From Dimorphilus gyrociliatus (taxonomy: Eukaryota; Animalia; Annelida), in the NCBI GenBank assembly GCA_904063045.1, contig CAJFCJ010000004.1, positions 2,432,496-2,496,495 of the forward strand: DNA of 64,000 nt. The letters are read 5' to 3'. The notes beneath the pieces are model-generated. The model saw only the letters and a list, made by a program, of their open reading frames with translations, was not told the DNA's origin and did not search any database. Made by a program: the position numbers and the translations under genes. This document shows, one piece after another, positions 1 through 16,841 of the stretch; the first letter of the stretch is position 1, and the number at the start of each line of letters is the position of its first letter.

Positions 1-997
1 ATATGTATATTAATCATACACATACGTACTATATACCTCTCATTCATCTTTGTATAGTTAGAAAACTCTATACTATTAAGAATTTCAAAAGGAAAGGAAA
101 CTCTAACACTAGATAAAATATTATCAGGTATCTTCTAGTTTAGATAAAGCTCAGCTTTTTTTTATATATCAAACAGTTAACGAGAAAGAGCTATAACTAG
201 TTTTTTATAACGCTTTGTTTATTACTTCTTATGTCTTTGTTTAAGATCGATTACTATTAATAGTACTATTACTACTACTGAAAAGTGTTCAAGCACTTGG
301 AGTTATTACAATTTTCCGTTCACATTATTTAGAGAATATAGAATATCGCCAACTTCAATACGATTCTCTTATGTATAATTACGTAAGAACCGTTACATAA
401 TTAACTAATTTTTGAACAATGTAAAAGAAAATTAAACGTTAAAACTTTTTAACAAACAGCAGATATTTGAATTTGCCTGAATAGGTTGGATCGTTTCTTA
501 ATTTAATCATTTGTTGACTAAACGAAAATAAGTTACGTAGTCAATTCAATTAAAGTTGATTGAATAAATCTTTAAAATGAAAGGGAAAGAAGAGAAAATA
601 GGCATTTAGTTCCTTCTTTCTCTTTTTATAATATACGTTGAAAAGCTTTTTCTTTCTAACATTGTTTTATAGAGTAAAAATATTTGTAATCCGTATTTAA
701 AACATTTGTAAGGAAGTATTATTTATCTGTTAGAGATTATTTCAATACTTATTTTTAATAAAATATCTAAAAGATTAGTGGCTAGCAACACTTTAGAAAA
801 TAATCTGTCTCATAAATATTCATATTTATAAGTTTTATTTTTCTCTTAAATAGAAGAAAACTTTTACTACGGTCTCTTAAAAGGCTATAGCTGCTACTGT
901 GCTGCTATGTTCTTTTGAGGGATATATCTCATTTTTATCAACTTTGTTTCGAAAACTCTTACTAAAATCATTGTCAGTATCTGCTGGTTAAAGTATA

Positions 998-3900
998 ATG
1001 GGTTCGGGTGTATCGACACTAGATTATCATCTTAAATCTACTGCAATAAATGCTGGAAAAGGTAAACTTTTAATTGATTCTTTTTCGTTTTTCTATAATT
1101 AATTAACTTCTCTTTCCCATCCTTTCTCACTAGGTTTGTTCCAAGCTGTAAGAATTGGAAACAATCCCGTAGTATGCCAAAGACTATTAAAGCTAGAACC
1201 AAATCTGGCTTTAGAGCTTTACGATGGACTGATGAAGAAAACTGTTCTCAGAGTATGCAAATTTTTTTCCAAACGAATTTAAAGTTGACATTTGGTAAAG
1301 ATGCATTAAAACAATAACAGATTGCCCATCACCAACTTTCTGTAATAGATGAAAGTAGTCCGGAATATCAACTTCGATTACAAATCTATAATATAATTAA
1401 AAATGGTGTAGACGAAGCTATGAGAACAGCTATTTTAAAGGACAATCTGAAGTATATAGTAGATTTATTCAAAGGCGGTAAAATACAAACTTAATCAATG
1501 TTTTATGAATGCAAAATTTATTTTCTTCTTTCTAAAAAGGTGCTGACGTTGTACAACTTGATAATCCTTCGTGTACGAACAAACTTGGTTGTTTAGGTCT
1601 GGCTTGTGATAAAAAAACTATTAACAATGAAATAGTTAAATTCCTTACTGACAGCGATGAAAGAAACATTCCGGTAAAGTGTAAAATACCACTTGATGCT
1701 ACTGAATACTTATAATAATGATAAAAAAATCCAGGTACTTTGTGAGGAAATGAAACCTTTTTCTCGTAAAAGTCTATTTAACAAGATACAGGAAAAGGGA
1801 AGTTCAGATTTGCAAAACGATTCAAGAAAGAAAATTGAAAATCATCTTTTCAAATTGATAGCAACATCAGATGTAGATGCGGCAAAAATGGTCGAGAAAC
1901 TCGGGTTAATAGCTTTCATATCTTTTTTCTTATCTATAGTATGTAAGTGTTGTAATTTTTATAGATATCAATTTTTTCCACTGAACTTTTCAAATGATAA
2001 GAGCGAAACTCCAATAGAAGTGGCGATAAAGAACAGAGCATTCAAAACAATAAGCAGTATTTTACGTTATGATGTAAAATATTCTTCAATTTTCTCGTTT
2101 TCTTTTATAATTGATTATTTTTATTTGTTCTTTTTACTTAGAGAAATAACATACCAATAAATATCCAAGAGGCTAAGTATGAATTACTATTTATATTATT
2201 AACTTCCTTGTCCCCCAGCCCCACGAAAACTTCCCTCTATTAAGACTTTTACTTTTAACAGCCATCAAATTACAGTTGCCCTAAATATTGGTCGAAATAC
2301 TGAGGAGTTATTCAAACATTTAAACGAGATTAACTCAATTGAAAATTTTTCTAAACATTTAAGAAATATCGATAAACGTGCAGTTGATGAGAGAGGTAAA
2401 ATATAATGACAATGGGTTTAAATACTAATAATTGTAATATAGGTAATAATATTTTGAACCTTGCACTCATTAATGAATGCTCCGAAGATATTTTGAGAGT
2501 AATCCTAAAAAACAGTCAAGTATTGCATAATGTTGTTAATGACGATGGACTCGACTGTATTCAAATTACCATTAAACATCTTGAGAATAGATATTTGAAA
2601 ATTTTATTCGAAGAAGGAATAAGTTTATTAAACCCAAGGCAAATAAATTACTTAGAATTTGCTAAAGGTGAGTAGTTCTTCCCTCCTCCCTCCCTCCCTC
2701 TCTCTCTCTCTCTCTCTCTCTATCATAGATAATACTTGTGTACTATGTAGAGGTGAATAAATTTGAAGAATTTGAAATGATTTTAACTACTGAAATGTGG
2801 AAAATTTTAAGAACGGCAGTGTCAGTGTCAGATATGAAAACTTTTCATGAAGTTACCGCTTGTGGTGGTAATCCTAAGATTATCAATCGCGACTTTAACT
2901 TGGAAGATTCATCGTCCCTTATGCATTGCGCTATCGAAAAAGGTAATCAAGTGAAATTAATAAGCAATCAATCGCTATTTATGTATCGATTTATTTTAGA
3001 TCAGCGAAAAATGATAAAAGAACTATTTTTAATTGGAGTAGATATTGGTAATACGCATCATCCAGATGAACTGACTCCTTTACATTTAGCAATTCTCAAA
3101 GATAAAGATGCAATTGTCGATGAACTCTTCGCCTTTAATTTGCCCCAAAACTTGAATTTATCTTCACAGAGTTTGACTGAAAGTAGAACAGCTTTAATGG
3201 AAGCTGCTATTAGAAATAAATTAGAAGTGGTAAAACTTCTAGTATTGAATGGAGCTGATACGCAACAGAAGGATAAGTCGGGAAGGACAGCTGCCGCTTT
3301 AGCGTCGAACAAAAATATTGCGTATTACCTACAGAGTATAGAAGATATTGTAGATGAACTTCAAATATTAGACAATATTCCAGTTGGAGATAATTTGCAA
3401 AATCATCCAAGAATATTGCAGGAATGCGAAGGTTATTCTCTCGAACCTCAACCTTTAAGTAATATGGATAAGAGAAAAAGATACCTTAAAATTGTCAGGA
3501 TTGATAATCATTTATCGTTCATGAGTATCGATAATCTAAATACAAAATTAGGTAGTGCTATCAAAGCTTCGGAATTGCAAGACGTCAAAAGTTTCTGCAA
3601 TGACGGAGCTGATGTTGCCTGTTCAAGTGGTTCTTTAACGCCTTTAAGATTAGCTAATCAAACGCTAAACAAACTATATAATTTTTATAGGAACGCTAAT
3701 TTTCATGAAGGTAACAGCCATGGATATGAAAAAATGCAGAAAGCTATTAGCGTATCTATTTGGATACAAAATAGATTAAACTTCGAGTTGTGTAGAGCAA
3801 TTAGAGATAATGATTATCCTAGACTGATTGGCTTAACTGAGGCAGGAGCTAGTTATACTCTTCCTGATATTGATCAAAAAACAAAAGTTAAAGAACGATT

Positions 3901-6900
3901 CACCTCACCATTTGGTTTAATTGGAATATCTTTGGAAAATCACGACAATGTGGACATTGTTAAAGCAGTATTAAAGTTTACTCCAGAGGAAAACAATCAA
4001 GTTTTGGTCAGCCATAATTCTTTAACTTCAATAAACATTGCCCAAAAGTACAAAAGACATAATAGTGCTCAAATTATTATTCAATATTTTACCTTGAGTT
4101 TTAAATTACTACTTGAAAACGTAACAAACAATGACTCTTTAAGTCAGTTGGAAAAAGAACAATTGGTAAAAAAAATGGAAATTTTGATGAAGGATGGAGC
4201 CTTACCTTCAATAAATACAAAGGAAATTCTAAAGCAAGCTCTTCAGTTCTCCAATTACAACTTATTTAGATTAACTTTGGAAAAAGGAGCCGACCCAAAT
4301 TTAATAACTGAAGAAGACATCGATAGATCACCTAATAATAGCGATATAAAAAACATCTTTTTATTTTATAAAAAACAACACGAAACCCATAATAACTTGG
4401 TTAACGCTCTCTTTAAAGGAGATTTAAAGTTTGTTACCGAATTTCATAGACGGGGTTGTAATACTGCTGGTTATAATTTTAACGGTGATACTTTTGTACT
4501 TTGGGCAACAAAGCTAGGTTCGAAAGCTTTAGTTGAGTATTTCTTAGGAGTAGGAGGTCCGCTTGATCATCGAAGTTTAAGTGAAACGAAATCTTTGGTT
4601 GAAATATCAAAGAACTCAAACAACGTCGATCTATATAGTTTAATTGAAAATGAGGTGAAAAAACGTTTAAAAATGTCAATTATCAGCGGTGATTGTAGTG
4701 AAATTGACATATTATGCTCTTCGAATTCATATCTGTTAGCCGATATCGAAGAGGACTTGCTTGCTAATGATAACGAAACAATTGGAACTTTGGCTGCTAA
4801 GAATTTTTCTATAGAAGTATTTAGAACACTACACACTTACAACGTTAACTTTCATAAGTTAAATAACTTGGGAGAATTTCCCTTAGCTATAGCGGCGTCT
4901 AAAGGAGATTTTAGCATTGTTGAATTTCTTGTCGAAACAGCTGGAGTAAATGTACAAGAACAATATGGCAATTCAACAGCAGCTGATTTGGCGCAAGCCA
5001 AAAAATTCCTTGTAATTGCTCACTATCTAAATACGGGAGAATTACCAGAGGATGATTTAGACAGCAAAGAACCATTATACACTTTAAATGAACTATTAAA
5101 CGCTGTTAAAAAGGCAAATCATACAATTATTGATGAATTTATAGACGATGATTATAACGATCCAAAATTAAAAGTTCAACATTGTAAGCAGATGATTTTA
5201 TGCGCAAAAAGGTTATTTTTTATTATTAGTTTTATTTTTATTGTGGTTATTAAAACTATTGTTATGTACAAACAAATCAAATATTCAAAAGGTGTTTTAC
5301 CTACAACACAGAGAACGGAAGCTGGATATTGCTATAAAACTAGAAAGATTAGCTAAAGATATGGTTGATCCATATACTACCGGTATGTAAAGATTCATAC
5401 ATCATTCAATTTTAGTATTTTATAACATTCCTATCATTTTAATTTAGGTCGAGTTCTTACGCTTTCCAATAAACTAAGAGAAGTTCTAACAACTATGACA
5501 AAGACAATCTATCAGTTAATTATAGAAACTGACGAAGTAGGTTCGGATACAGATAACTTGACGGCTATTAGACGACTAACTAAAGAGAGAATCTGTAAAA
5601 CATTCCTGTCGAAAACGGATATTAACGGAGAGAAACAGGAATTACGGGAAATGGCCAAAAAAACCGAAACCGAAATCGACAACATTGATATACAAACAGA
5701 CGAAATTAAAGAATCATTAAAGAAAAAGAAAGATGAATTGGAGAAAGCTACTGATCCGGAAGAAAGACTATCCTTAAGAAAGGATATAGAGGAAACGGAG
5801 AGAAGGGTAAAAATTTAAGATATTTAAAGATTTACGGTATTCAATTCAAGCTGTAGGATAGTAAAAAACAACTTATTGTCTGTTTTGGATAAAAAGAGGA
5901 ATAATAGCAACAGTAGGCTGAATAGAAGGTAAAAGTATATATCTTCCAATTTGGCTTTACATTTGAGAACTTCCTAAGCAACTACAATTTACTTCCAGTT
6001 TAATTAATTATTGAAATGTATGTTTACTTGTAATATTTAGAAGATATACTTTATAATAGGCTCTTCAAGTAAAAATATAAGACATTCTTAATTTTGCTTA
6101 GGAAACTATATACTAAAGGATTCTAAGTATCCAATTATCTTTAGATTTTATCCCTCTGTTTATGAATTATTAAATTCTTTGTTTACAGATGCCTCTGTTG
6201 AACTATTATAGAATTTTACTGAACGAAAAAACAAATATTATTAAAAAACATGAAGAAATATTGGAACTTAATCAAAGCAGCAGGGCGGAAGTGTATACAT
6301 TCTTTAATAGAATAAAAAATCAACTTAAAATGTTATATGCTCAACACTACGTTCAAGATGATGAGAAGGAAAAAACTGACGATCAGTCTGAAAACGATAG
6401 CATTCGTAAAGTCATTGTCTTATTCAGCGATTCTGTAATGGAGTTGGCTATTGACGAAATTGACAAAAGTTCGTCTGATGGAGTAAGCCTTTATCATATT
6501 TAATTCTTCTTTTCCTAATATCTTATTAACAATTAGAGAAAGATTGTCTCGATTCTTGCGAGAACTCTTCAGGCAACAAATAGCGATATAACAATAGACA
6601 ACGAAGTACAATCAGAGGAACGTTTACTCTTAACAAGTGGTCTTCTCGATATTGAAATATCATTATCGAGTTACAGAATAGCGCTATTTTATCATCATCA
6701 AGTTGGTGTATTTATAGGTAAGAAGGGAATATTTACATATTTTTAGCTAATTATCAAATGAAAATATGCGGATTGTTTATTTTAATATAGACGACGAAGC
6801 CTTCAAAATGATTTACAACTTTTCCGATTTCATAACATATGCAATATATACGAACAGATCGAAATTTAATGATATACAACCAATACAATTGAGTAAGTGA

Positions 6901-8684
6901 AATATATCTATAATTAATATTTATTCAATTAGATAATCAATGTATTCTATTCATTTTTCACTTAAAAAAAAGATGAACAGTTCGCGCTTGCTGCTACTAC
7001 GACATTAAGCTTAATATCGGATATTGGAGAGAAATTAAAGGTATAGTATAGGAAAGTGTTTTTTCATTTTCCATCTTATTACTTGGATCTTTTCTTTGGA
7101 AATAGGCTAAAATTAAATGTGCGGATGAAACCATTCGTGATACAACTATATATGAATTAAGCACGGAAGGAGTAATTATTACATCAAATGGACATTTATA
7201 CGGTGATGAGAAAAATATTGATATCTTTGGACTCTATCCAGGAACAAAAGAAGTAGCTGAAAAACGAAAGTTGCAATTATTACTAGAAAAAGGGGTGGCT
7301 AATCCGAATTATTACCCTCAAGGTTAACTATTTTAATCCATTTATTCTTTAAAATATTAATTAATAATTAATTATTTTTAGAGTCTATTGAAAAAGTCCT
7401 AAAGTATATATCGAGACAAGAGATAAACAACTTCCTTGATTCGCAAGGTGTTAGCAAAAAGTCTATTCAAATTGAGTTGCAAAAATATTCCGGGATAGTT
7501 GATGATAAAGTTCTAAAATTAAACCAGAAGTTTATAATTTCTCAAGCGAATGTTGAGGATCAGGTATTGATTACGTCATCTTTATAATTTTGTATTTTGG
7601 CCCGATTATTAACCTGCTGCTTTCGCTTCTTGATAACGTCTTTGTACAATTAAAAATTTGTAACATTCACTTTTAGGCACCGACTTACACAATTATAATT
7701 GATTAGCCTCAAGGTAAAAAATAGGACGATTTTATCACATTTGATGCTTTTAAGCGCTTCAATACTGTAACAATTTCGGTTAGCCAGCCGTAACATCAAC
7801 GGTTGGTTATTCAATTGTTAAAGCACACACACAAAAAAAAGAAAGTTTCCTCTTTGAATTCTTTTCAGAGATTCACCTTTTATTACATTCTTTCAGATAA
7901 CAAAAATGTGTGGCCACATTGATGAGCATGTTAAAAAGACGAGTGGAGAGCTGGAACAAGTAAGGCATCATCAACAGGTGTTTATGAAACAAGCACTTAA
8001 CGATTTTAAAAATCAAATGGCTATATTATTGACTACTTATGAAAAAGAAAAGGTTCTTGAGAGATGCCATCTTCTTACCTAATTATTTTAAAATCATAAA
8101 TTTTGATTTAAACAGAGTGAAAGAACTGAGGAATTTAGAAAATTTAAATGGAGATTGAAGCAAATCTACGGCGAACAAAGCGATGATACGGTCGAAAAAT
8201 TAAATAACGATAAAAGAGAGTTTGAGCAAAGAATTAAAGATTTTAATGAGGAAATGCAAAATTCTTATCATCAACTTTTCGAAACAATGCATAAGACTTT
8301 GGGACAATTTGCAGTAAAGGTAAAACTGTCAAAACTAACTGTTTTTTATTAAAAGTGTTTAAGAACCTTCTTGACACTTTGAAGTGATATTGTAAATAAA
8401 ATAAATCATTAATGCTTTACTTCAATTCAGATGAACAATATGGAAATGAGTGTGAATTCTACGGAGAGTACAACAAGTCGATTAGGCGAGGTTGTCCATG
8501 ATTTTAAGGACAAACTAAATTTATTCAAGAGACAAGTATATATAACTATAGATAATATTCGGATAATTTGAATAATTATTGAATATAATTTATATCTTTT
8601 CAGCTTGACTCGTTCGACTTTAAAATTGAAGATATAATTCCCAATTCGGAAAGTCCACTTCCAAAAACTGATATATTCGAATAA
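998..8684 (+). CDS. Large multi-exon ankyrin-repeat protein with an N-terminal MGSGVS myristoylation-type motif and a long helical/coiled-coil C-terminal region
   Basis: ATG at 998. Phase-consistent exons 998-1061, 1134-1252, 1321-1477, 1540-1673 and 1735 onward join the track ORFs 1693, 2406, 2738, 5495, 6189 and 8155. The last exon is 8604-8684, ending in TAA. Ankyrin motifs: TPLHLAILKDKDAIVDELF, TALMEAAIRNKLEVVKLLVLNGAD, FPLAIAASKGDFSIVEFLVE. Some internal exon boundaries are approximate. Confidence 0.8.
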
Positions 8685-9214
8685 GAGAGCGCACTCTACC
8701 AGCTGATTCTGTCTTGAACAATTAAATATATATCTTCTCTTCTTTTGGCTTTTTGTAACAAATACATTAAACTTACATTATTAATAGTATTTTGTTGTAA
8801 TATACAGAAATTAGAAGGTATAAAACTCTAAATGGTAAAAGTGATTTTTAAAGGAAGATGTAGGATATGAAAAAGGAATTAATCTGGTAAAGGATTCACC
8901 GTCCTTAAATCGTTAAAATCTCCAGAGAGGATAAAGTAAAGTATTGATTTTAGGGTCGTTAAATTTCGATACATCGCATTTTGGAAGCGGAGACATCGGA
9001 ATCCTTTCTTAAGAAATTCCATTGTTGATGCACATAAACCGCAATTTTTAAACGATTTAGGTCATTTAATGACATAAACTAGTATAATAATAACAAGTTT
9101 CGAAATGTAATTCATCTTTACCCCTTCTTAACGACTTCTTTTCAAGAGCCGACTATAAATCAATTGTATCAATTGTAAGCATTCATCTGTCAAACTGTTT
9201 TTTTAAATTTTACG

Positions 9215-9226
9215 ATTCGCGCCAAA
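9215..9226. promoter_or_regulatory. E2F-like site in a CpG-rich patch
   Basis: ATTCGCGCCAAA matches the classical TTTCGCGCCAAA E2F site at 11 of 12 positions and lies in the CpG-rich stretch 9210-9345. Confidence 0.3.
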
Positions 9227-9371
9227 TTTTCGGCCCTTAAGGGCTCGTTTGCATATTCGAATTGCACGCGTCAGTCTTTATTGAAATCGCTGCGCGCTCA
9301 TTCAACTGTCAGTCGCGTTAGATCCGCATCGCTCCTAAGACCGGTATTTATTTTCTATTTTTTTTTCTCTT

Positions 9372-9376
<5 letters not shown>

Positions 9377-9412
<36 letters not shown>
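9377..9412. repeat. (CT)n microsatellite, representative of many CT/GA tracts
   Basis: Direct sequence. Confidence 0.95.
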
Positions 9413-9414
<2 letters not shown>

Positions 9415-11296
9415 ATTAACATTATTATTAATATTTTTTGTCCTATATAAATTAATATTCAAATTTATGGCCGTTTTAATAAAAACTAACAATTATTTAT
9501 AATATTTAAGCAATAAACTATTAAATTCTTATTAACTTACCACCATGCGAAAATTTGTTACCTTTAAACAGCCTTTTATGATTATTAAAGAGCTAAATCA
9601 TCATTTTATATTTAGATATATTTTCTTAGGTAAATGTAGCTGTATGGAAAATTAATTCGTACCTTGTTAAAAGTTATAACTAGTTACGTACTTAAGCAAT
9701 TTAATTACATTTTATCGCCTCCTTGCCAAAGGCTTATGTAATGTTATCAAAAGAGAAAATGGAGAATAAATTCTTCTTTTGTTCCCTATTCTTTTTTTCT
9801 TTAACTAATTTTCCACATAATTTACTCAATTAATAGGAGTTTAATATTAACCCACTTCCGCTCTACTGTATTTTTCATGGTAAAAGGGGAGGATGATTGA
9901 AGGAGGTGGGAGGCAAAAAAAGAGAAAGAGAGAAAGAAATTCCTACCTTTTTACCCTTGGTCACTAAAATTTATTTATAAATAAACTAAACTACCTTCCG
10001 ACCGTGCATGATCTATTATTACGGCATTTACATTTAGGTCACGTGACTGTGATTTATGACATTTAGGGAGTTTATGCTCACCCTTTATGCTATGGAAGGG
10101 TTGTTTTTGGTATATTTATTACCCGTTTCTTTTTTATATCGAATATAGGTGGTCCAAAGGTTTATTGGTAATATCTGTTACATTACAGTGTACCGGTGTA
10201 TAAGAAATGACTGTTTTAATGTTTTATAACTTGATTTCTTGTTAAACATTTGCACATATGAAGAACTTTGATTTATTTTATGAACCGGCGAATATTTTAT
10301 TGAAGGTTATTTAAATAAATTAAACTCCCAATTGCGCTTAAGATTAAGGAGAGGGGAAAGAGAGAGAGAGAGAATGAAAGAGGACGGGGAGAGAGAGAGA
10401 GAGAAGAATAAAAATTAATAAGAGTAAATCGATAGGGTTAGGGTCATCTTAAATAAGAGTCTTTTAAGGTACAAGTTACTCTACACCTCGTTAAAAACGC
10501 CGTGGGAAAAATAGACAATACCTTCAGTAAATCGTACGCAAGGGTCTAGTTATGTCACGTTAAAGGTCGTTTGTTCATTGTTGATGTAAAAAAAGTAAAG
10601 GTTATTATATTCAGACTTTTGACTCTTTTATAATAATGAAGAGGTCGGTTTATAAATAGGTAAAGTGACATTTGATTGAGGATTAGGAGTTTTAAGTACA
10701 CAAATATCAAGTTTTGTAAATAATTCACATTCCCCCTCTTTTCTCCATCCTTATTGCATTATCGTCTTCACTTCCTTACCTTGAAATTAATACTAATTAC
10801 TTATTCAACCGGAACCGTATGTCTTCTTGTTATCGTTGGATTTATCCTAAGAGGACAACTTTTAGGAGAAGTATTAAAAAAAAAAGCAGGAAGAAGAGAT
10901 GAAAAAAGTAAACAATTTGTCTTCTTTCATCTTCCCTTGAAGTAAGGAATCGGTGCATGTTCGACCCTAAAAAAATATAAAGGGTTAAAAAAAAACTAGT
11001 AGCGCGATTAACTTGGAAGACCGTGCGAAACGCATGATCACGCTGATAAAAAGGTTACGGAAATGATCCTTTGTGACGTAACGACCCCTAAAAATCCTTA
11101 CTGTCAACACCTGGGGCTATTTTCATTACGCCTTACTGGCTTTTCGAGACTTTTTATGATCATTTAATTTTGGCATCACGCATATTTATCATTCCCCTTA
11201 GTTTACATCTCCTTTAGGAGATCAACCAAGAAGCCGCCTCACCCGTTGTCATCCCTTTACCCTCCCATTCATAAACTACCTAAGATTCAAGCCATT

Positions 11297-11380
11297 ATTG
11301 GCGAGTTCATAAGCTTTCAGAGCACCCTAAAGTGGGCCCTTTAATTGGCGTTTTTAACGTGTCCTCGCGGCGCGTTTGAA
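11297..11380 (+). promoter_or_regulatory. Putative cell-cycle promoter module: two inverted CCAAT boxes plus CDE/CHR
   Basis: ATTGG at 11297 and 11344; GCGG at 11367-11370, a 4-nt spacer, then TTTGAA at 11375-11380. Motif match only. Confidence 0.35.
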
Positions 11381-12529
11381 AAGGAATCAATAGTACCTGT
11401 AGAGGAGTTTCTATTTATAGAAAGGCCCATACAGTACGATACAGTATGGTGTAATAAAAAAAAGCAGTAGCGTGTGAACATAAAAGGCTATTTTCATATT
11501 TTCGACCCAAGAATAGTATTTTAAAATAATCTATTAAAAATTTATTTCACCGGTTCTATACCTTATTCAAAATTCTTTTGTGCCGCGTCAGAGCCTTCTT
11601 CCTACTACCTTACAGTAATTTTCTTTTCATTCGGCAGCTGAAGAACGTTTTAGAATACCTCTTCTACCCAGTTGGAGTTTTATTGGGTACGTTTTGTTCC
11701 CATTATCATTAGGGATAAAAAAAAGTTTTTTCAAACAATAAACTATTGATAAAGTTTTTCCCCAAAGAAGAAAATTGAATAGAGACAAATCACCGACGAA
11801 ACGTAATAAAGAAGAGAGAATAGGAGATATTAAAAAGGAGAAGACAGTTATATATATATATATATATATAGATATATATACAGTATATATATATACATAT
11901 TCAATCTATACAAAGAGGACGAAGAGGAGGAGTTATTGAATACAATTTAAAAAATACACTCGATCTCATTGAAAAGGCGTTTTGGTTGAATATATATAGA
12001 AAAGAAAGTCTGAAATGCTTAACGCCAATAAAGATAGAATCTTGTAAGTTAAATTACTTTTTTTTTTTACATCTAACGTATAATAATGCAATATACGTTG
12101 CATATAGTGAAACGCTCGTTATCTTAGGCGCCATCTACCCGTGCACTTGTTATATGACTTTGTGCGGCAGACCATTCGGAGGCGTTATAGCTAAAGAACA
12201 ATATTTTTAAGGGCAACAAATTTGGGAAATTTTATCGCTTTAGTGCTGGAAAAAATATTTTGTTTGACGAAAACAAGACATTTTATTTGTAAAATAGGAA
12301 ATAAAAACGAAAACGAGATAGATAGATAGAAGGAAAAAGAGGAAAAAATTGAGAGGAAAGAAGGATTTGAATATACTTAGTCACTTAGTCAAGGTTAGAG
12401 AAGAGAGAGAGAGAGAGAGGAAGTAAAGAATATTAAAAGATAATTATATATCTCTCTATCTATACACGTTGTACAGATTTATTCAATATACTATATATCG
12501 GCGTACGTATATATTTGTACACATGAAAG

Positions 12530-14609
12530 ATGAATGAGGAAAATAATCAGAGGTAATTAATACGGGTAATTTCTAAAAGAATATCTATGTCTTAGTTTAA
12601 TTTATTTATTCATTAAATTCTCGAACCAAGTAGCAAAAAAGATAATTATCTTTTTGAGATTGACATCCAAGTGTCAAACTCTTCAAAGAGCAGAAAGAGA
12701 AAGCGACGAGGGCTTGCCGGCGGATAGAAAAGCTAGTTAATTACGTTTTTAAACTTGCAGATATTGCCGTCAGACGCAAACTTCTCCTCTAAATCGATAT
12801 TTGAGAAAAGGAAGAAGAGAAGAATCCGACTTGGAAGTCGGTGTTTCAACAGCTACTCAAACATCGAGTGCACTCGATTCTCTTCTAATCGGCTTTCGAC
12901 CGATACCATCGAGAAATCTCATCAAAATTTTTGCCAGTTCTTATCAAACTCCAGATGATCTCATAGTAAACTATATTACCGATCTCTATATGAAATTAGC
13001 TAAAGAATTGCATAATGACGCGATCCTGGGGCAAAAATTACAAATGGCGCTTACGCTTTTTTATAGGATTCTTGAAAAGATTCTATTAATGGAAAAAAGG
13101 AATTACAATGATAAAGAAATGACTTTAATCTTACGGAAGGAAATGTTTTACAAATGTCTTTTCGCTTGCGTCTTTGAAATCCTAATCTTTTCTTATGACT
13201 CTGAAAAGACATTTCCCTGGGTAATTCGGGTTCTGGATTTATCTGCCTTTAATTTTTACAAAGTAATTGAATTGGTAATTAGGGCCGAAGGCAGCCTAAG
13301 CCGTCAGCAGGTTATGCATTTGAACAAGATCGAAGAATCCATTCTAGAGAGTCAAGCGTGGGCCACAAATAGCCCTCTTTGGTATCTTTATAAAGAAAAC
13401 GGATACGCACTAAAGCGACATCTCTCTAACAAAACTGATTCGGTCGAGTTATTTTTAAGAAAAGTACAAAATTTAGCCTATGCTAAATTGAAAAATTTCT
13501 CCTGTCATTTAAGAATTAATGAGATACTCTTTGATAAAATTTTATCGACGTTTCGCTTCGTTCTAACTAATCATACCACAATTATGATGGATAGACATAT
13601 TGACCAAATAATTATGTGTATCGTATATGCTATTGCCAAAGCAACTGGTCAGAATATCTCATTTCAAAGAATTCTAACCATTTATAAAATGCAATCGCCG
13701 TCCAATATTAATATTTATCGAAAAGTTCCGCTGACGAAGCGTTCTTTTAATCAGCTGACCTCAATAGAAACATCAATTGATGAACCTCTCGAAAAGAGGA
13801 CGAAAACTGGTCAACGCTTTCCATTTTCCTTTACTCGATCAGATTATAAAGATTCCAGAGAAGAGAGAAGATATGTGAAAAAAACTGCAACTGACAGAAA
13901 AAATACCGTTGATATCAATAATAACAATAATAATCATAATCATGATAATAATAATAATTATGATGACGGAGATAATGACGTCGACGGGAACGGCTGTGAA
14001 AATGATGATGATACTGATAATAATAATAATGAAAACTGGATATCATCCAAGAGAAGACGATTTTCTGCTTTTAAAATGGTGAATAGATCGCATCTGTTAC
14101 ATAACGCCAATAAAGAGACTGTAGAAAGGACATTGACTCAGTTGTCAACGAATTCTACTGTGCAAATAGTTTATCGACAAGGAGCTAATAAAGACAGAGA
14201 ATACGGGGATATTATTCAGTTTTACAATTCCGTTTTTGTCTGCTTAGTAAAGGATTTTGTTCTAAAAATAGCAAAGTTATATAAGAAAGAAATGGAGGAA
14301 AAGGAGAGAGAAGATAGAAATGAAAAGAAAACTCGATTAACTGGTATTCACTCTACGAATTATCCAAGAAAATATGGAGATTTTCGAGTTTCCGTTCATT
14401 CATTTAAACCGGTTAAAATAGAACAATCCGTGTCCTATCATTTTCAAACGTCTCCTTCTCATAAACTCTCTACGATTAATTCTATGATTAATAGAAACGA
14501 TAATTCATCTTCAACAACAGCAGCTAGAAGGAATTTAAATATGACAGAGAACTGGAATCAATCACCAACCCTTTTAAAGCTATTATTAAATAAGTTGAAT
14601 AATAATTAA
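12530..14609 (+). CDS. RBL1/RBL2-like: Retinoblastoma-family pocket protein (p107/p130-like), shortened to about 623 aa
   Basis: RB_A box (FYKCLFACVFEILIFSY..TFPWVIRVL..FNFYKVIELVIRAE..LSRQQVMHLNKIEESILESQAW), RB_B box (DRHIDQIIMCIVYAIAK; GDIIQFYN) and RbC core (YHFQTSPSHKLSTINSMI) all match p107/p130 motifs. The track ORF starts at TTG 12801. A micro-exon 12530-12552 (ATG..AG|gtaatt) splices in phase to the ttgcag acceptor at 12760. The family call is firm; the start exon is inferred. Confidence 0.9.
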
Positions 14610-15727
14610 GATGTCTAGGAAAGCCTTTATTTCTCTTATTGTGTTATCTTTGTTTTAGTCTTTCTCGCCTCTTAGACTTTGTTATCATACTTTTATATCT
14701 TGTTTGTTTTATTTTAGAAATACATTTTTTTTAACCTCTTCAATCAATTTGTTAACATCGATTTATACTCCTTTTATTTAAATTATCAACAATTATATTA
14801 AAGCTTAGATTATTAGAGTAACACAAGGAATATATTTTATCATATAGGAAATAAATTGACTTAAACCTTTCAGAGTGCTGTTTGTATAGGAGCAACTTTA
14901 CCAGGCACTAAATAACCGCTATGAAAGTAATCTTGTTAAATAATGTTTTAGTAATTGGGTAAATTTTATCCAAAAAAGGATTTTTTCTTTCTCATTCATT
15001 CTCTATTTTATTATCCATTTCTCTCTCTCTCTCTTCCTTGTTACTTCAATCTCTTACTTTATCTTATGCTCTTTTCCCCAGAATCCCCTCTCTCCTTCCA
15101 TCTCTTTCTGCTTGTTACACACCACACAGACACACACACACACACACTCTCTCTCTCACACACATCATCATTTCTCTTGTCTCATCTGAACTAAATCCAA
15201 CTACTGGCTAATTTTAGATCGATATAAGAAGAGAACAACAACAAAATATAGGGAAATTTTTTTTTATTCTCTTTCATTTTTTCCTTCTTATGTCATTTTT
15301 TTTTCTTGGCCAAATTTTGGATGAGAAGAAGCCCCGAGTCGGAATACGAATTGCATTAGACAAGCCGCGTCGCTCTACTTGATCAAGCGCCGTATAGACT
15401 TTCAATAATAGTCTTCTTTTTGTGTAGCCTTTTGTGTTGGATGTATTATCTGGTTAATAAAACGTTAATATATTTATACTGGCCTGTTTGGCTAGGCATT
15501 TTTCAGTGTTTATTTTTATGTTTGCGATTAGCACTCATCTTTTCTGGTCTATTTTTTGTATATACAGCATTTATATATAAAAGGAAAGTTTTGTCCTCTT
15601 TATCACTAGTTATTCTAACTGCTACCCTCATCGTCAATTTTCCCTTTTCTTTCTTCTTTATTCTCTGATAACCTTTACTAAATTTTGTGCTGAAATCGTT
15701 ACTGTCTCGGTTCAGAAACGACCCAAG

Positions 15728-16841
15728 ATGATTAAACTGGAGGACGTTACCTCAGTAAGTGTCTTTTCTAAAAGAATGTATTCTTTTCTGACAGTGGAGA
15801 GACTACAGGAAACGTTAGATTTTTGAATTAAATAGCAATAATGAAAAATTAAATAAAAATAAACAAAGAGAATAATCCCATAATACACTATTCTTCTTTC
15901 TTTCTATTCCCGAACAGGCATTAGATTATAATAAATTTAGCTTTCTCTACTCTCAGCTACAATGCAAGCAGAATGATTTGAAAGAGCTGAGAGAATTTTT
16001 AAACGAAAGTCGTTCGATTGAGGAAAATTATTGTAAAGGTTTATTGAAGCTATATTGTAAATTTCCAAAAGAGGATCATTTCAGTTCCTTTCAATCTCTC
16101 TGGGACAATCTGAAAGATCTCGTCAGGGGGGCTTGCAATTTGCACCAAACTGTAGCTCACAATTTGAATGATATATCCAACAATCTTAAAAAGTATATGG
16201 GTATAACATCCTACTTATTCTTAACGATTATTTGCTGTTTTTTTTAACTTGTCAATAGTTTAATGGAATTCCTTTTCCATTGTAGAAAGTGTCAAAACCA
16301 AAAATGAGGCTATTAAGATGGAAGAGAGCAGTATACTTACGTTTAAAAGATCTTTAGATAACCTTGAAAAATCAAAAGAAAAAGCTAAAAGTGACTATAG
16401 GAGCGTAATTAATTATCTGAATGATTATAAGACTAGGTCGTTTGTTAAAGGCGACTGTTTGGAAAAGCTTATGTCAAAAGCTGAAAAGTCATCGTTGACC
16501 TTTAAAACTCTTGACGTCCGTTATGTCGATTCAAAGGACGAATTTGAAAGAAGACTTGAAAAGATGTATGGAAATATAGAAAAAGCAGAAAACCATCATT
16601 TAGATAACTTGAATAGCTTTACTATTGATTATTCGAACGTATGGACGAGTTATTCTTTAAATTTTGATCAGGTTCATTTTCTGTTTTATTGATAATTGAA
16701 TTTAATGAATAAATAAATGAGCTAATTAATTAATAGCTAATAATTTTATATAAACAGCTCCTTAAGCATAAAAATCTAAAGAAATTAAAGAAGAGCTCCT
16801 CCCCTCCTCGCTACTCTTCTCCTAGTCAGTCGAAAGGCTAA
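15728..16841 (+). CDS. F-BAR-only protein, FCHO/PSTPIP-like, about 259 aa
   Basis: Exons 15728-15754, 15918-16200, 16286-16671 and 16758-16841 are phase-consistent. FSFLYSQLQCKQNDLKELREFLNESRSIEENYCKGLLKL matches the FCH motif (F.VLY.....G....KEL..F..ER..IEE.Y...L.KL), followed by helical coiled-coil. The first exon is uncertain. Confidence 0.7.

What the first reader, a model, noticed from the sequence alone, without database searches (positions are those of the whole stretch)
12530..14609. Miniature Rb-family protein with no N-terminal domain and almost no A-B spacer
Seen: homology to p107/p130 starts at TSPLNRYLRK..VSTATQT, just before the A box. No RbN-coding exons are visible in the 3 kb upstream. 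The A box (..SPLW) runs into the B box (DSVELFLRKV..) after only about 15 residues. Established: p107/p130 have an N-terminal domain of several hundred residues and a spacer of about 200 aa carrying the cyclin-binding RxL motif. The LxCxE-cleft residues (Y and K in CIVYAIAK, and FYN) and the RbC core are retained. Inference: a naturally minimal pocket protein of about 623 aa that still binds E2F and LxCxE partners but has shed its regulatory modules, probably a derived paralog.
Basis: partly seen in the sequence, partly recalled or inferred. Interest (0 to 1): 0.75.

Follow-up and report, generated by a model that had tools for sequence, protein, structure and literature searches.

The report
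Truncated p107-like pocket protein paralog
The tiny marine worm Dimorphilus gyrociliatus keeps, next to a normal p107/p130-type cell-cycle brake gene, a conserved stripped-down copy. That copy encodes the E2F-binding pocket and tail but lacks the N-terminal domain, the cyclin-docking spacer and most CDK sites.

Summary
The window is annelid DNA (Dimorphilus gyrociliatus), not human. Positions 12530-14609 (+) hold a two-exon gene for about 623 aa, annotated without a name as DgyrCDS3161.

- **Domains:** the protein has RB_A and RB_B, and the predicted fold matches the p107 pocket (TM 0.80).
- **No RbN:** a profile that finds the paralog's RbN exons at E 1e-62 finds nothing in the 12.5 kb upstream.
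- **Segment lengths:** the spacer is 18-19 aa, against 144-215 in other RBL proteins. The B insert is 153 aa, and the RbC-like tail is kept.
- **Descent:** trees place it inside the p107/p130 clade as sister (99/98) to the worm's only other pocket gene, a full-length RBL on another contig. Its single intron has the same position and phase as one in that gene, so it arose as a 5'-truncated DNA duplicate.
- **Selection:** relatives at dS about 0.8-1 keep the frame, with dN/dS about 0.12.
- **Residues:** the LxCxE-cleft residues are kept. The T373-like CDK site and the CDK-site cluster after the pocket are lost.

I read it as a CDK-poor "large pocket" repressor; that function is inferred, not shown. 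Each trait has a precedent elsewhere, but I found the combination nowhere else.

Unexplained: a 775-nt block covering the intron and most of the A domain is 98.6% identical between the species.

The parts
12530..12552 (+). Exon 1: ATG plus 7 codons and 2 nt (MNEENNQ, first 2 nt of R). The donor GT follows at 12553.
   Evidence: The sequence is. It matches the N-terminus of the deposited protein P0001. The ATG and donor are conserved in relatives L007 and L008, and similarity to the relative starts only at about 12511.
12553..12760 (+). Intron 1 (208 nt, phase 2). It has the same position and phase as the intron before the A exon of the full-length paralog.
   Evidence: In both genes the intron splits a codon after its second base, the next residue is Y, and STATQT follows 28-29 residues later. 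The intron is about 98.6% identical to the relative.
12761..12842 (+). Remnant of the RbN-pocket linker. The TSPL CDK-type site is kept. The TP just before STATQT (the Rb T373 position) is replaced by VG.
   Evidence: Compared with the alignment consensus and the parent sequence SETPVSTATQT.
12843..13385 (+). RB_A domain
   Evidence: Pfam PF01858, E 1.3e-50. pLDDT is mostly above 85.
13386..13439 (+). A-B spacer of only 18 residues
   Evidence: Pfam domain edges and lengths measured against 248 family members.
13440..14252 (+). RB_B domain, interrupted by a disordered N/D-rich insert of about 150 aa (nt 13764-14189)
   Evidence: Pfam PF01857, E 3.4e-30. The insert is 153 aa against 27-76 in other RBL proteins. 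pLDDT is below 50 for aa 335-476.
14253..14609 (+). C-terminal region with the RbC-core-like motif (YHFQTSP..L..IN.M) and the stop codon. No S/T-P cluster follows the pocket.
   Evidence: 32% identity to the paralog's C-terminal exon, E 5e-10. It is conserved in P0002 and P0003, with dN/dS 0.13.
12539..13313 (+). Ultra-conserved block, unexplained. It differs from the relative at 11 of 775 positions, and at none in 12967-13294.
   Evidence: For comparison, the parent gene in the same pair of species has dS 0.77-1.03.
14874..14915 (+). Alternative last coding exon used by the deposited model. It is doubtful as coding sequence.
   Evidence: Located. A 2-nt indel in the relative shifts its frame.

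Best explanation
This is a real, selected gene for a "large-pocket-only" member of the p107/p130 (RBL) lineage.

**Origin (shown and inferred).**
- It arose in the Dimorphilus lineage by a 5'-truncated DNA duplication of the full-length RBL gene. The break lay in or upstream of the intron that precedes the A-domain exon, and a new 8-codon first exon was recruited.
- The spacer, together with the intron inside it, later collapsed to 18 residues. The intron in the B insert was also lost, and the insert grew to about 150 residues.

**What is shown.** The pocket fold, the LxCxE-cleft residues, the family-invariant residues of the A domain (my assignment of them to E2F contacts rests on memory) and the RbC core are all kept.

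**What is inferred.**
- The protein binds E2F-DP through the A/B groove and the RbC tail, and binds LxCxE partners through the B cleft.
- It cannot dock or inhibit cyclin A/E-CDK2, because it has no spacer RxL and no N-terminal inhibitory region.
- It cannot be shut off by RbN docking on the pocket, because it has no RbN and no T373-like site.
- It has lost the CDK-site cluster after the pocket.

It should therefore act as a repressor that is largely blind to CDK. Control would then come from expression or turnover rather than phosphorylation. The full-length paralog keeps the whole LIN52 phosphate pocket and is the more likely DREAM subunit.
For: - **Domains and fold:**
- **No RbN:**. The upstream neighbour is an ankyrin gene on the same strand.
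- **Only two pocket loci in the genome:**
- **Phylogeny:**
- **Shared intron position and phase:**. The parent has further frame changes between its A, B and C exons that the mini gene lacks.
- **Purifying selection:** dN/dS is 0.12 in B and 0.13 in the tail, at dS 0.6-1.7.
- **Restricted family:** an exhaustive HMMER search finds one close cluster at 880 bits, and the next hit scores 215 bits.
- **Cleft residues:** p107 Y849, K853, I931, Y934, N935 and V939 correspond to Y289, K293, I485, Y488, N489 and V493 of the mini protein (alignment, numbering from PMC4421984).
- **Parent spacer:** the parent keeps DKFASP and RRLL in its spacer and has at least 16 S/T-P sites. The mini protein has 6, and none lie in the 60 residues after the pocket.
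- **What the lost modules do:** PMC3325851.
Against: - I had no transcript data, so the 5' end rests on the deposited model, on splice-site conservation and on the absence of any upstream coding signal.
- No binding has been tested.
- Two of the four LIN52 phosphate-pocket residues are changed (R869 to K, S876 to I), so partner choice may differ from p107.
- Six S/T-P motifs remain, so some CDK control is possible.
- An RRNLNM motif in the tail could still dock a cyclin.
- The deposited model splices the RbC tail away. If that isoform dominates, the E2F-DP tail contact would be missing.
Confidence: 0.7

Rival explanations
1. It is a full-length RBL gene whose RbN exons lie further upstream and were missed by both the reader and the annotation.
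For: About 6 kb upstream (6.5-12.5 kb) has no long ORF. I have no transcript data.
Against: - The RbN profile finds nothing in window 1-12800 (best E 2.4), yet it finds all three RbN exons of the paralog.
- DUF3452 hits only contig C5 in the whole genome.
- The upstream ORFs carry no Pfam domain.
- The next gene upstream is an ankyrin-repeat gene on the same strand.
- In the relative, similarity stops about 20 nt before the ATG.
Confidence: 0.05
2. It is a decaying partial duplicate, that is, a pseudogene or an unexpressed relic.
For: It is truncated at the 5' end. It sits on a long stem branch of 1.1-1.3 changes per site. Its B insert is low-complexity sequence.
Against: - A 615-codon frame is intact in three lineages, and for the one relative whose DNA could be read, dS to the window species is about 0.8-1.
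- dN/dS is 0.12-0.13 in B and the tail, and 0.49 even in the insert.
- The start codon and splice sites are conserved.
- The pocket is predicted with confidence.
Confidence: 0.04
3. It is a real protein that works mainly as a competitor or decoy. It would soak up E2F-DP or LxCxE partners away from the full-length RBL/DREAM complex, rather than act as a repressor itself.
For: It keeps the binding surfaces but lacks the regulatory and some partner-specific features. The LIN52 phosphate pocket is half lost (alignment with PMC4421984). The full-length paralog keeps all four residues.
Against: In mammals the large pocket alone is the minimal growth-suppressing unit, and the small pocket alone can repress (PMC3325851). 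No data here separate the two modes.
Confidence: 0.2
4. It is a much-changed RB1 ortholog rather than an RBL duplicate.
For: The genome has no RB1-type gene. RB1-type models of Lottia and Capitella also have spacers of 19-22 aa.
Against: - The RB1/RBL split has 100/100 support, and the mini protein lies on the RBL side, sister to the worm's own RBL gene at 99/98. Lottia and Capitella fall with RB1.
- It has the B-domain insert typical of p107/p130.
- It shares an intron position with the RBL paralog.
Confidence: 0.03

Closest known systems
Human p107/p130 (RBL1/RBL2) pocket proteins
   Same: A and B cyclin-fold pocket (35-37% identity, TM 0.80 to 7smd/4yoo). Also the B-domain insert, the LxCxE-cleft residues, the RbC-core motif and membership of the same clade.
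   Different: - No RbN and no N-terminal CDK-inhibitory region.
- A spacer of 18 aa instead of about 180-215, so no RxL cyclin-docking site.
- The T373-type linker site and the CDK-site cluster after the pocket are lost.
- Two of the four LIN52 phosphate-pocket residues are changed.
Full-length RBL paralog of D. gyrociliatus (G000:C5, about 4054500-4058940, minus strand; L009)
   Same: It is the sister gene. It shares the intron position before the A exon and is 55% identical in the A domain. Its C-terminal core is homologous.
   Different: The parent has three RbN exons, a long spacer with DKFASP and RRLL, at least 16 S/T-P sites, all four LIN52 phosphate-pocket residues, and introns in the spacer and the B insert.
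Engineered loop-deleted pocket constructs used for crystallography (p107 deltaL in 4YOO/4YOZ; Rb in 3POM)
   Same: A and B are joined by a short linker and there is no RbN. These constructs fold and bind E2F, E7 and LIN52 peptides (PMC4421984). The mini protein aligns to them in one stretch across the A-B junction.
   Different: The constructs also delete the B insert and the C-terminus. The natural protein keeps an enlarged insert and the RbC tail.
Drosophila Rbf (D. willistoni XP_002064120, 833 aa) and RB1-type models of Lottia and Capitella
   Same: The A-B spacers are naturally short, 19-22 aa by the same measure.
   Different: Rbf keeps an N-terminal region of about 380 aa. The Lottia and Capitella models belong to the RB1 clade and may be partial gene models.
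RefSeq RBL1 models without RbN in insects (Rhodnius prolixus 602 aa, Anabrus simplex 663 aa, Homalodisca 602/645 aa)
   Same: They have RB_A and RB_B only, with the A domain starting within 30-115 residues of the N-terminus.
   Different: Their spacers are 127-150 aa. They are predicted models that nobody has characterised. Some may be isoforms or truncated predictions, since one member of the Homalodisca cluster is 1023 aa.

Membership tests
Retinoblastoma pocket-protein family (Pfam RB_A + RB_B) | RB_A domain | tested here: met
   PF01858, E 1.3e-50, 172.5 bits against a cut-off of 25.
Retinoblastoma pocket-protein family (Pfam RB_A + RB_B) | RB_B domain | tested here: met
   PF01857, E 3.4e-30, 105.3 bits against a cut-off of 26.9.
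Retinoblastoma pocket-protein family (Pfam RB_A + RB_B) | Two-cyclin-fold pocket structure | tested here: met
   In the AF2 model the A and B cores have pLDDT above 90. Foldseek matches the p107 and Rb pockets at E 1e-19 to 1e-15, with target TM 0.77-0.81.
Retinoblastoma pocket-protein family (Pfam RB_A + RB_B) | LxCxE-cleft residues (p107 Y849, K853, I931, Y934, N935, V939) | tested here: met
   All six are identical in the alignment. Numbering was checked against PMC4421984. K293 and N489 are invariant and Y289 and Y488 nearly invariant in 36 sequences.
Retinoblastoma pocket-protein family (Pfam RB_A + RB_B) | N-terminal domain RbN (DUF3452). It is usual in the family but does not define the pocket. 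| tested here: not met
   There is no DUF3452 on this contig. The RbN profile scores at noise level over the 12.8 kb upstream, with a positive control at E 1e-62.
p107/p130 (RBL) subfamily | Placement in the RBL clade | tested here: met
   The RB1/RBL split is supported at 100/100. The mini protein is inside RBL and sister to the worm's RBL gene at 99/98.
p107/p130 (RBL) subfamily | Insertion in the B domain | tested here: met
   153 aa, against 27-76 in RBL proteins and about 1 in RB1.
p107/p130 (RBL) subfamily | Long spacer with a cyclin A/E-CDK2 docking motif (RxL) | tested here: not met
   The spacer is 18-19 aa and has no RRLF-type motif. The parent has RRLL. The role of the spacer is described in PMC3325851.
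p107/p130 (RBL) subfamily | N-terminal CDK-inhibitory region | tested here: not met
   Only 8 + 27 residues precede RB_A.
p107/p130 (RBL) subfamily | LIN52 phospho-S28 pocket (p107 R869, S876, Y879, R880) | tested here: inconclusive
   The mini protein has K, I, Y, R, so two of four are kept. The parent has R, S, Y, R (alignment, PMC4421984). A search for LIN52 itself in the genome found nothing, but it also matched none of its control genomes.
p107/p130 (RBL) subfamily | RbC core that contacts E2F-DP | tested here: met
   The tail aligns to the parent's C-terminal exon (E 5e-10) and to the family consensus Y.F..SP...L.AIN.M. Binding itself was not tested.
Processed or decaying pseudogene | Broken frame or relaxed constraint (dN/dS near 1) | tested here: not met
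   The frame is intact in three lineages. dN/dS is 0.12-0.13 in B and the tail.
Processed or decaying pseudogene | No introns inherited from the parent | tested here: not met
   Intron 1 has the same position and phase as a parental intron. The two other parental introns in the region are absent.

The most novel reading that the evidence does not exclude
The 775-nt block (12539-13313) covers intron 1 and the first 184 codons or so of exon 2. In this reading it is a true ultraconserved element, held at the nucleotide level (dS 0.035, and 328 nt with no change) between lineages whose other genes differ at dS 0.8-1.0. It would then mark an RNA- or DNA-level control device in this CDK-poor pocket gene, for example regulated intron retention, an intragenic enhancer or an antisense target. 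Such a device could replace the lost phosphorylation control.
Probability: 0.25. Interest if true: 0.75.

Novelty: new variant of a known kind. Interest (0 to 1): 0.45.

Why it matters
Work on pocket proteins has relied on engineered "large pocket" and loop-deleted constructs to separate E2F and LxCxE binding from cyclin-CDK docking and from RbN-mediated inactivation. Here evolution has made and kept such a construct beside an intact paralog. The animal has no RB1-type gene and a very compact genome.

This gives a natural test of what a pocket protein does without a spacer, RbN and most CDK sites. It also shows how a two-RBL system might divide DREAM and non-DREAM roles.

The gene is deposited only as an unnamed prediction, and that prediction probably has the wrong 3' end. 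The ultraconserved block, if real, would be an unusual element in an invertebrate cell-cycle gene.

Tried and rejected
- **Rfam** on 12300-13500 and 14600-15900 gave only chance-level hits with E above 0.8.
- **RNA folding** of the intron (z -0.07) and of the whole ultraconserved block (z +0.36) gave no structure signal. A control stretch gave z -1.9.
- **Copy number:** the block is single-copy in the genome, so it is not a repeat or a mobile element.
- **LIN52 (PF10044)** found nothing in the genome, but it also matched none of its control genomes, so the result is uninformative.
- **Exact look-up** of the ORF product on other contigs found nothing. DNA for the third lineage (P0002) could not be fetched.
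- **Literature:** no paper holds both "Dimorphilus gyrociliatus" and "retinoblastoma".
- **Long-branch rows:** the first A-domain tree, with Thelazia, Nesidiocoris and a EukProt transcript, pulled those rows next to the mini clade. I left them out and say so. A quick tree with more long insect and ENA rows left the sister relation unresolved, although the mini clade stayed inside RBL.
- **Spliced model:** Exon 2 was always given by reference, and the junction was read only from the deposited protein P0001.
- **Paralog exons:** these were treed exon by exon, not concatenated.
- **Retrogene origin** was considered and rejected because of the shared intron.

Full report
**Source.** The window is G000:C4:2432496-2496495 of a 77.9-Mb assembly with about 31% G+C. 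The top protein hit, at 99% identity, is DgyrCDS3161 of the annelid Dimorphilus gyrociliatus (CAD5113997.1). The DNA is not human.

**Gene model.**
- A frame of 615 codons is open from 12762 to 14606, with the stop at 14607-14609.
- It is preceded by a polypyrimidine/AG acceptor at 12759-60.
- A 23-nt first exon at 12530-12552 begins with ATG and ends at a GTAATT donor.
- Splicing gives MNEENNQR-YCRQ..., exactly the N-terminus of the deposited protein, for 623 aa in total.
Exon 2 was used by reference, and the junction was read from P0001.

The deposited model leaves the frame after ...SVHSFKP for a small exon at 14874-14915. That exon is frame-shifted by a 2-nt indel in a relative. The read-through tail, in contrast, is conserved as protein in two related lineages, has dN/dS 0.13, and aligns to the C-terminal exon of the paralog (E 5e-10).

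**Identity of the protein.**
- Pfam finds RB_A (aa 28-208, E 1.3e-50) and RB_B (aa 227-497, E 3.4e-30).
- The best solved relatives are p107 pocket constructs at E 1e-58.
- An AlphaFold2 model built on a 36-row alignment has pLDDT above 90 in both cyclin folds. It is disordered in aa 219-224 (spacer) and aa 335-476 (B insert), and patchy in the tail.
- Foldseek returns the p107 pockets first (7smd_A, E 1.4e-19, target TM 0.80), followed by Rb pockets.

**No N-terminal domain.**
- DUF3452 matches only one locus in the genome, on contig C5.
- I built a 378-position profile from the N-terminal regions of 32 RBL and RB1 proteins and ran it with filters off against all six-frame pieces. It finds the three RbN exons of the C5 gene at E 1e-62, 4e-20 and 1e-16. 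In window 1-12800 the best score is E 2.4.
- ORFs between 5.5 and 12.2 kb carry no Pfam domain.
- The next gene upstream is an ankyrin-repeat gene on the same strand.
- In contigs of a close relative (L007 and L008, from Logan), similarity to the window begins about 20 nt before the ATG. Everything upstream is unalignable.

**Segment lengths.**

| Segment | This protein | Other RBL | Deuterostome RB1 |
|---|---|---|---|
| Before the A domain | 24 aa of exon 2 + 8 of exon 1 | 276-397 aa | 317-368 aa |
| A-B spacer | 18-19 aa | 144-215 aa | mostly 73-92 aa |
| B insert | 153 aa | 27-76 aa | about 1 aa |
| Tail after B | 111 aa | 110-135 aa | 140-205 aa |

**Descent.**
- The genome has just two RB_A/RB_B loci: this gene and a full-length gene on C5 (L009).
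- The C5 gene has RbN, a long spacer carrying DKFASP and RRLL, and a proline-directed C-terminus.
- I built maximum-likelihood trees separately on the A exon and on the first B exon, so the paralog's exons were never joined.
- These trees split RB1 from RBL at 100/100 and 96/97. They put the mini clade (window, P0002, P0003) as sister to the C5 gene at 100/99 and 96/94.
- Adding RB1-type models from Lottia and Capitella, plus the relative's copy of the parent, gives 99/98 for that pairing.
- Rows left out: Thelazia, Nesidiocoris, a EukProt transcript, and in the last tree the long-branch insect and ENA rows. A quick tree that kept the insect and ENA long-branch rows held the mini clade inside RBL but left the sister relation open.
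- The stem of the mini clade is long, at 1.1-1.3 changes per site.

**Mode of origin.**
- Intron 1 of the mini gene and the parental intron before the A exon are both phase 2, are both followed by Y, and lie 28 and 29 residues before STATQT. This points to a DNA-level partial duplication, not a retrocopy.
- The parent changes frame between its A, B and C exons, so it has introns in the spacer and in the B insert. The mini gene has none there.
- A single deletion spanning the spacer intron could explain both the lost intron and the collapsed spacer. This step is inference.

**Selection.**
- Between the window and L007, dN/dS is 0.12 in the first part of B, 0.09 in the second part, 0.13 in the tail and 0.49 in the insert.
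- The same pair of species differs at dS 0.77-1.03 across the parent gene.
- An exhaustive HMMER search of 1.84 billion representatives finds one close cluster (880 bits). The next hit scores 215 bits, so the mini family is confined to these Dimorphilus-like lineages in current data.

**Functional residues.** Numbering was checked against Guiley et al. 2015 (PMC4421984) on the alignment.
- The LxCxE-cleft residues p107 Y849, K853, I931, Y934, N935 and V939 are all identical in the mini protein.
- The LIN52 phosphate pocket (R869, S876, Y879, R880) reads K, I, Y, R in the mini protein and R, S, Y, R in the parent.
- The FYKVIE motif and other A-domain columns are invariant across 36 sequences. 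From memory, these include the Rb K530 and E533 E2F contacts.
- The TP just before STATQT, which is the Rb T373 position, is VG in the mini protein. The upstream [ST]PL site is kept.
- The 60 residues after the pocket are K/E-rich and helical in the model, with no S/T-P. The parent has six or seven S/T-P sites there.
- The review PMC3325851 states that the large pocket is the minimal growth-suppressing unit. It also states that the p107/p130 spacer binds cyclin-CDK and that an N-terminal region inhibits it.

**Reading.** The protein is a natural "large pocket". It probably binds E2F-DP and LxCxE partners. It has lost cyclin docking, CDK inhibition, RbN-mediated closure and most phosphorylation control. 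The binding and the CDK-blindness are inferences.

**Precedents.**
- Short spacers of 18-27 aa occur in Drosophila Rbf, an oomycete protein, and RB1-type models of Lottia and Capitella.
- RefSeq models of Rhodnius, Anabrus and Homalodisca, a tick model and an amoebozoan transcript lack RbN but have spacers of 76-150 aa.
- Among the 248 family members I measured, only the Dimorphilus group clearly combines a complete start just before the A domain, a spacer of about 18 aa and an RbC tail. The short-spacer, N-terminus-less entries are 323-440 aa models or fragments (Lottia and Capitella RB1-type models, an unnamed ENA protein).
- No paper links this species with Rb.

**Unexplained.**
- Positions 12539-13313 differ from the relative at 11 of 775 sites, and at none in 12967-13294. 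Both edges are sharp.
- dS is 0.035 over codons 1-180, against 0.3-1.7 in the rest of the same ORF and 0.77 in the parent's A domain.
- Residues 77-184 are identical in all three lineages.
- The same sequencing run (SRR23372216) carries the diverged parent gene (L011), so the sample is not simply the window's species.
- The block is single-copy, has no Rfam match and shows no folding signal.
- The open candidates are nucleotide-level constraint, introgression and a chimeric contig.

Noticed in passing
window 12539-13313: A 775-nt block, covering most of intron 1 and the first 184 codons or so of exon 2, is 98.6% identical to a relative. That relative's other genes differ at dS 0.8-1.0. A 328-nt stretch has no change at all, and both edges are sharp.
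   Followed up: partly
window 14774-15008: A conserved block downstream of the stop codon is about 87-93% identical to L007. It contains the small alternative last exon used by the deposited model. A 2-nt indel breaks that exon's frame in the relative, so conservation looks non-coding (3' UTR or another element). There is no Rfam match.
   Followed up: partly
whole genome G000 and L009: Only two pocket-protein loci exist in the assembly, and both are of the p107/p130 type. No RB1-type gene was found, although Lottia and Capitella have RB1-clade models. RB1 may have been lost in this lineage.
   Followed up: partly
proteins P0161, P0158, P0130, P0186, P0255: Several database models have RB_A and RB_B but no RbN: Rhodnius 602 aa, Anabrus 663 aa, Homalodisca 602/645 aa, Rhipicephalus 552 aa and a Thecamoeba transcript of 584 aa. 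Whether they are real short paralogs, isoforms or truncated predictions is unknown.
   Followed up: no
window 6500-12530: About 6 kb upstream of the gene has no ORF of 75 aa or more and no Pfam signal. It contains (GA)n/(CT)n tracts near 9.3-9.5 kb and 12.4 kb. This is a long gap for such a compact genome.
   Followed up: no
window 13764-14189 (B insert): Parts of the disordered insert are invariant in three lineages, for example the run VERTLTQLSTN.TVQIVYRQGANKDREYGD and a KRRR[FL]SAFK motif. These suggest short linear motifs of unknown function.
   Followed up: no
G000:C5:4109889-4110020: An E2F/DP winged-helix exon lies about 50 kb from the full-length RBL gene on the same contig. At least four E2F/DP-type loci exist in the genome.
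   Followed up: no
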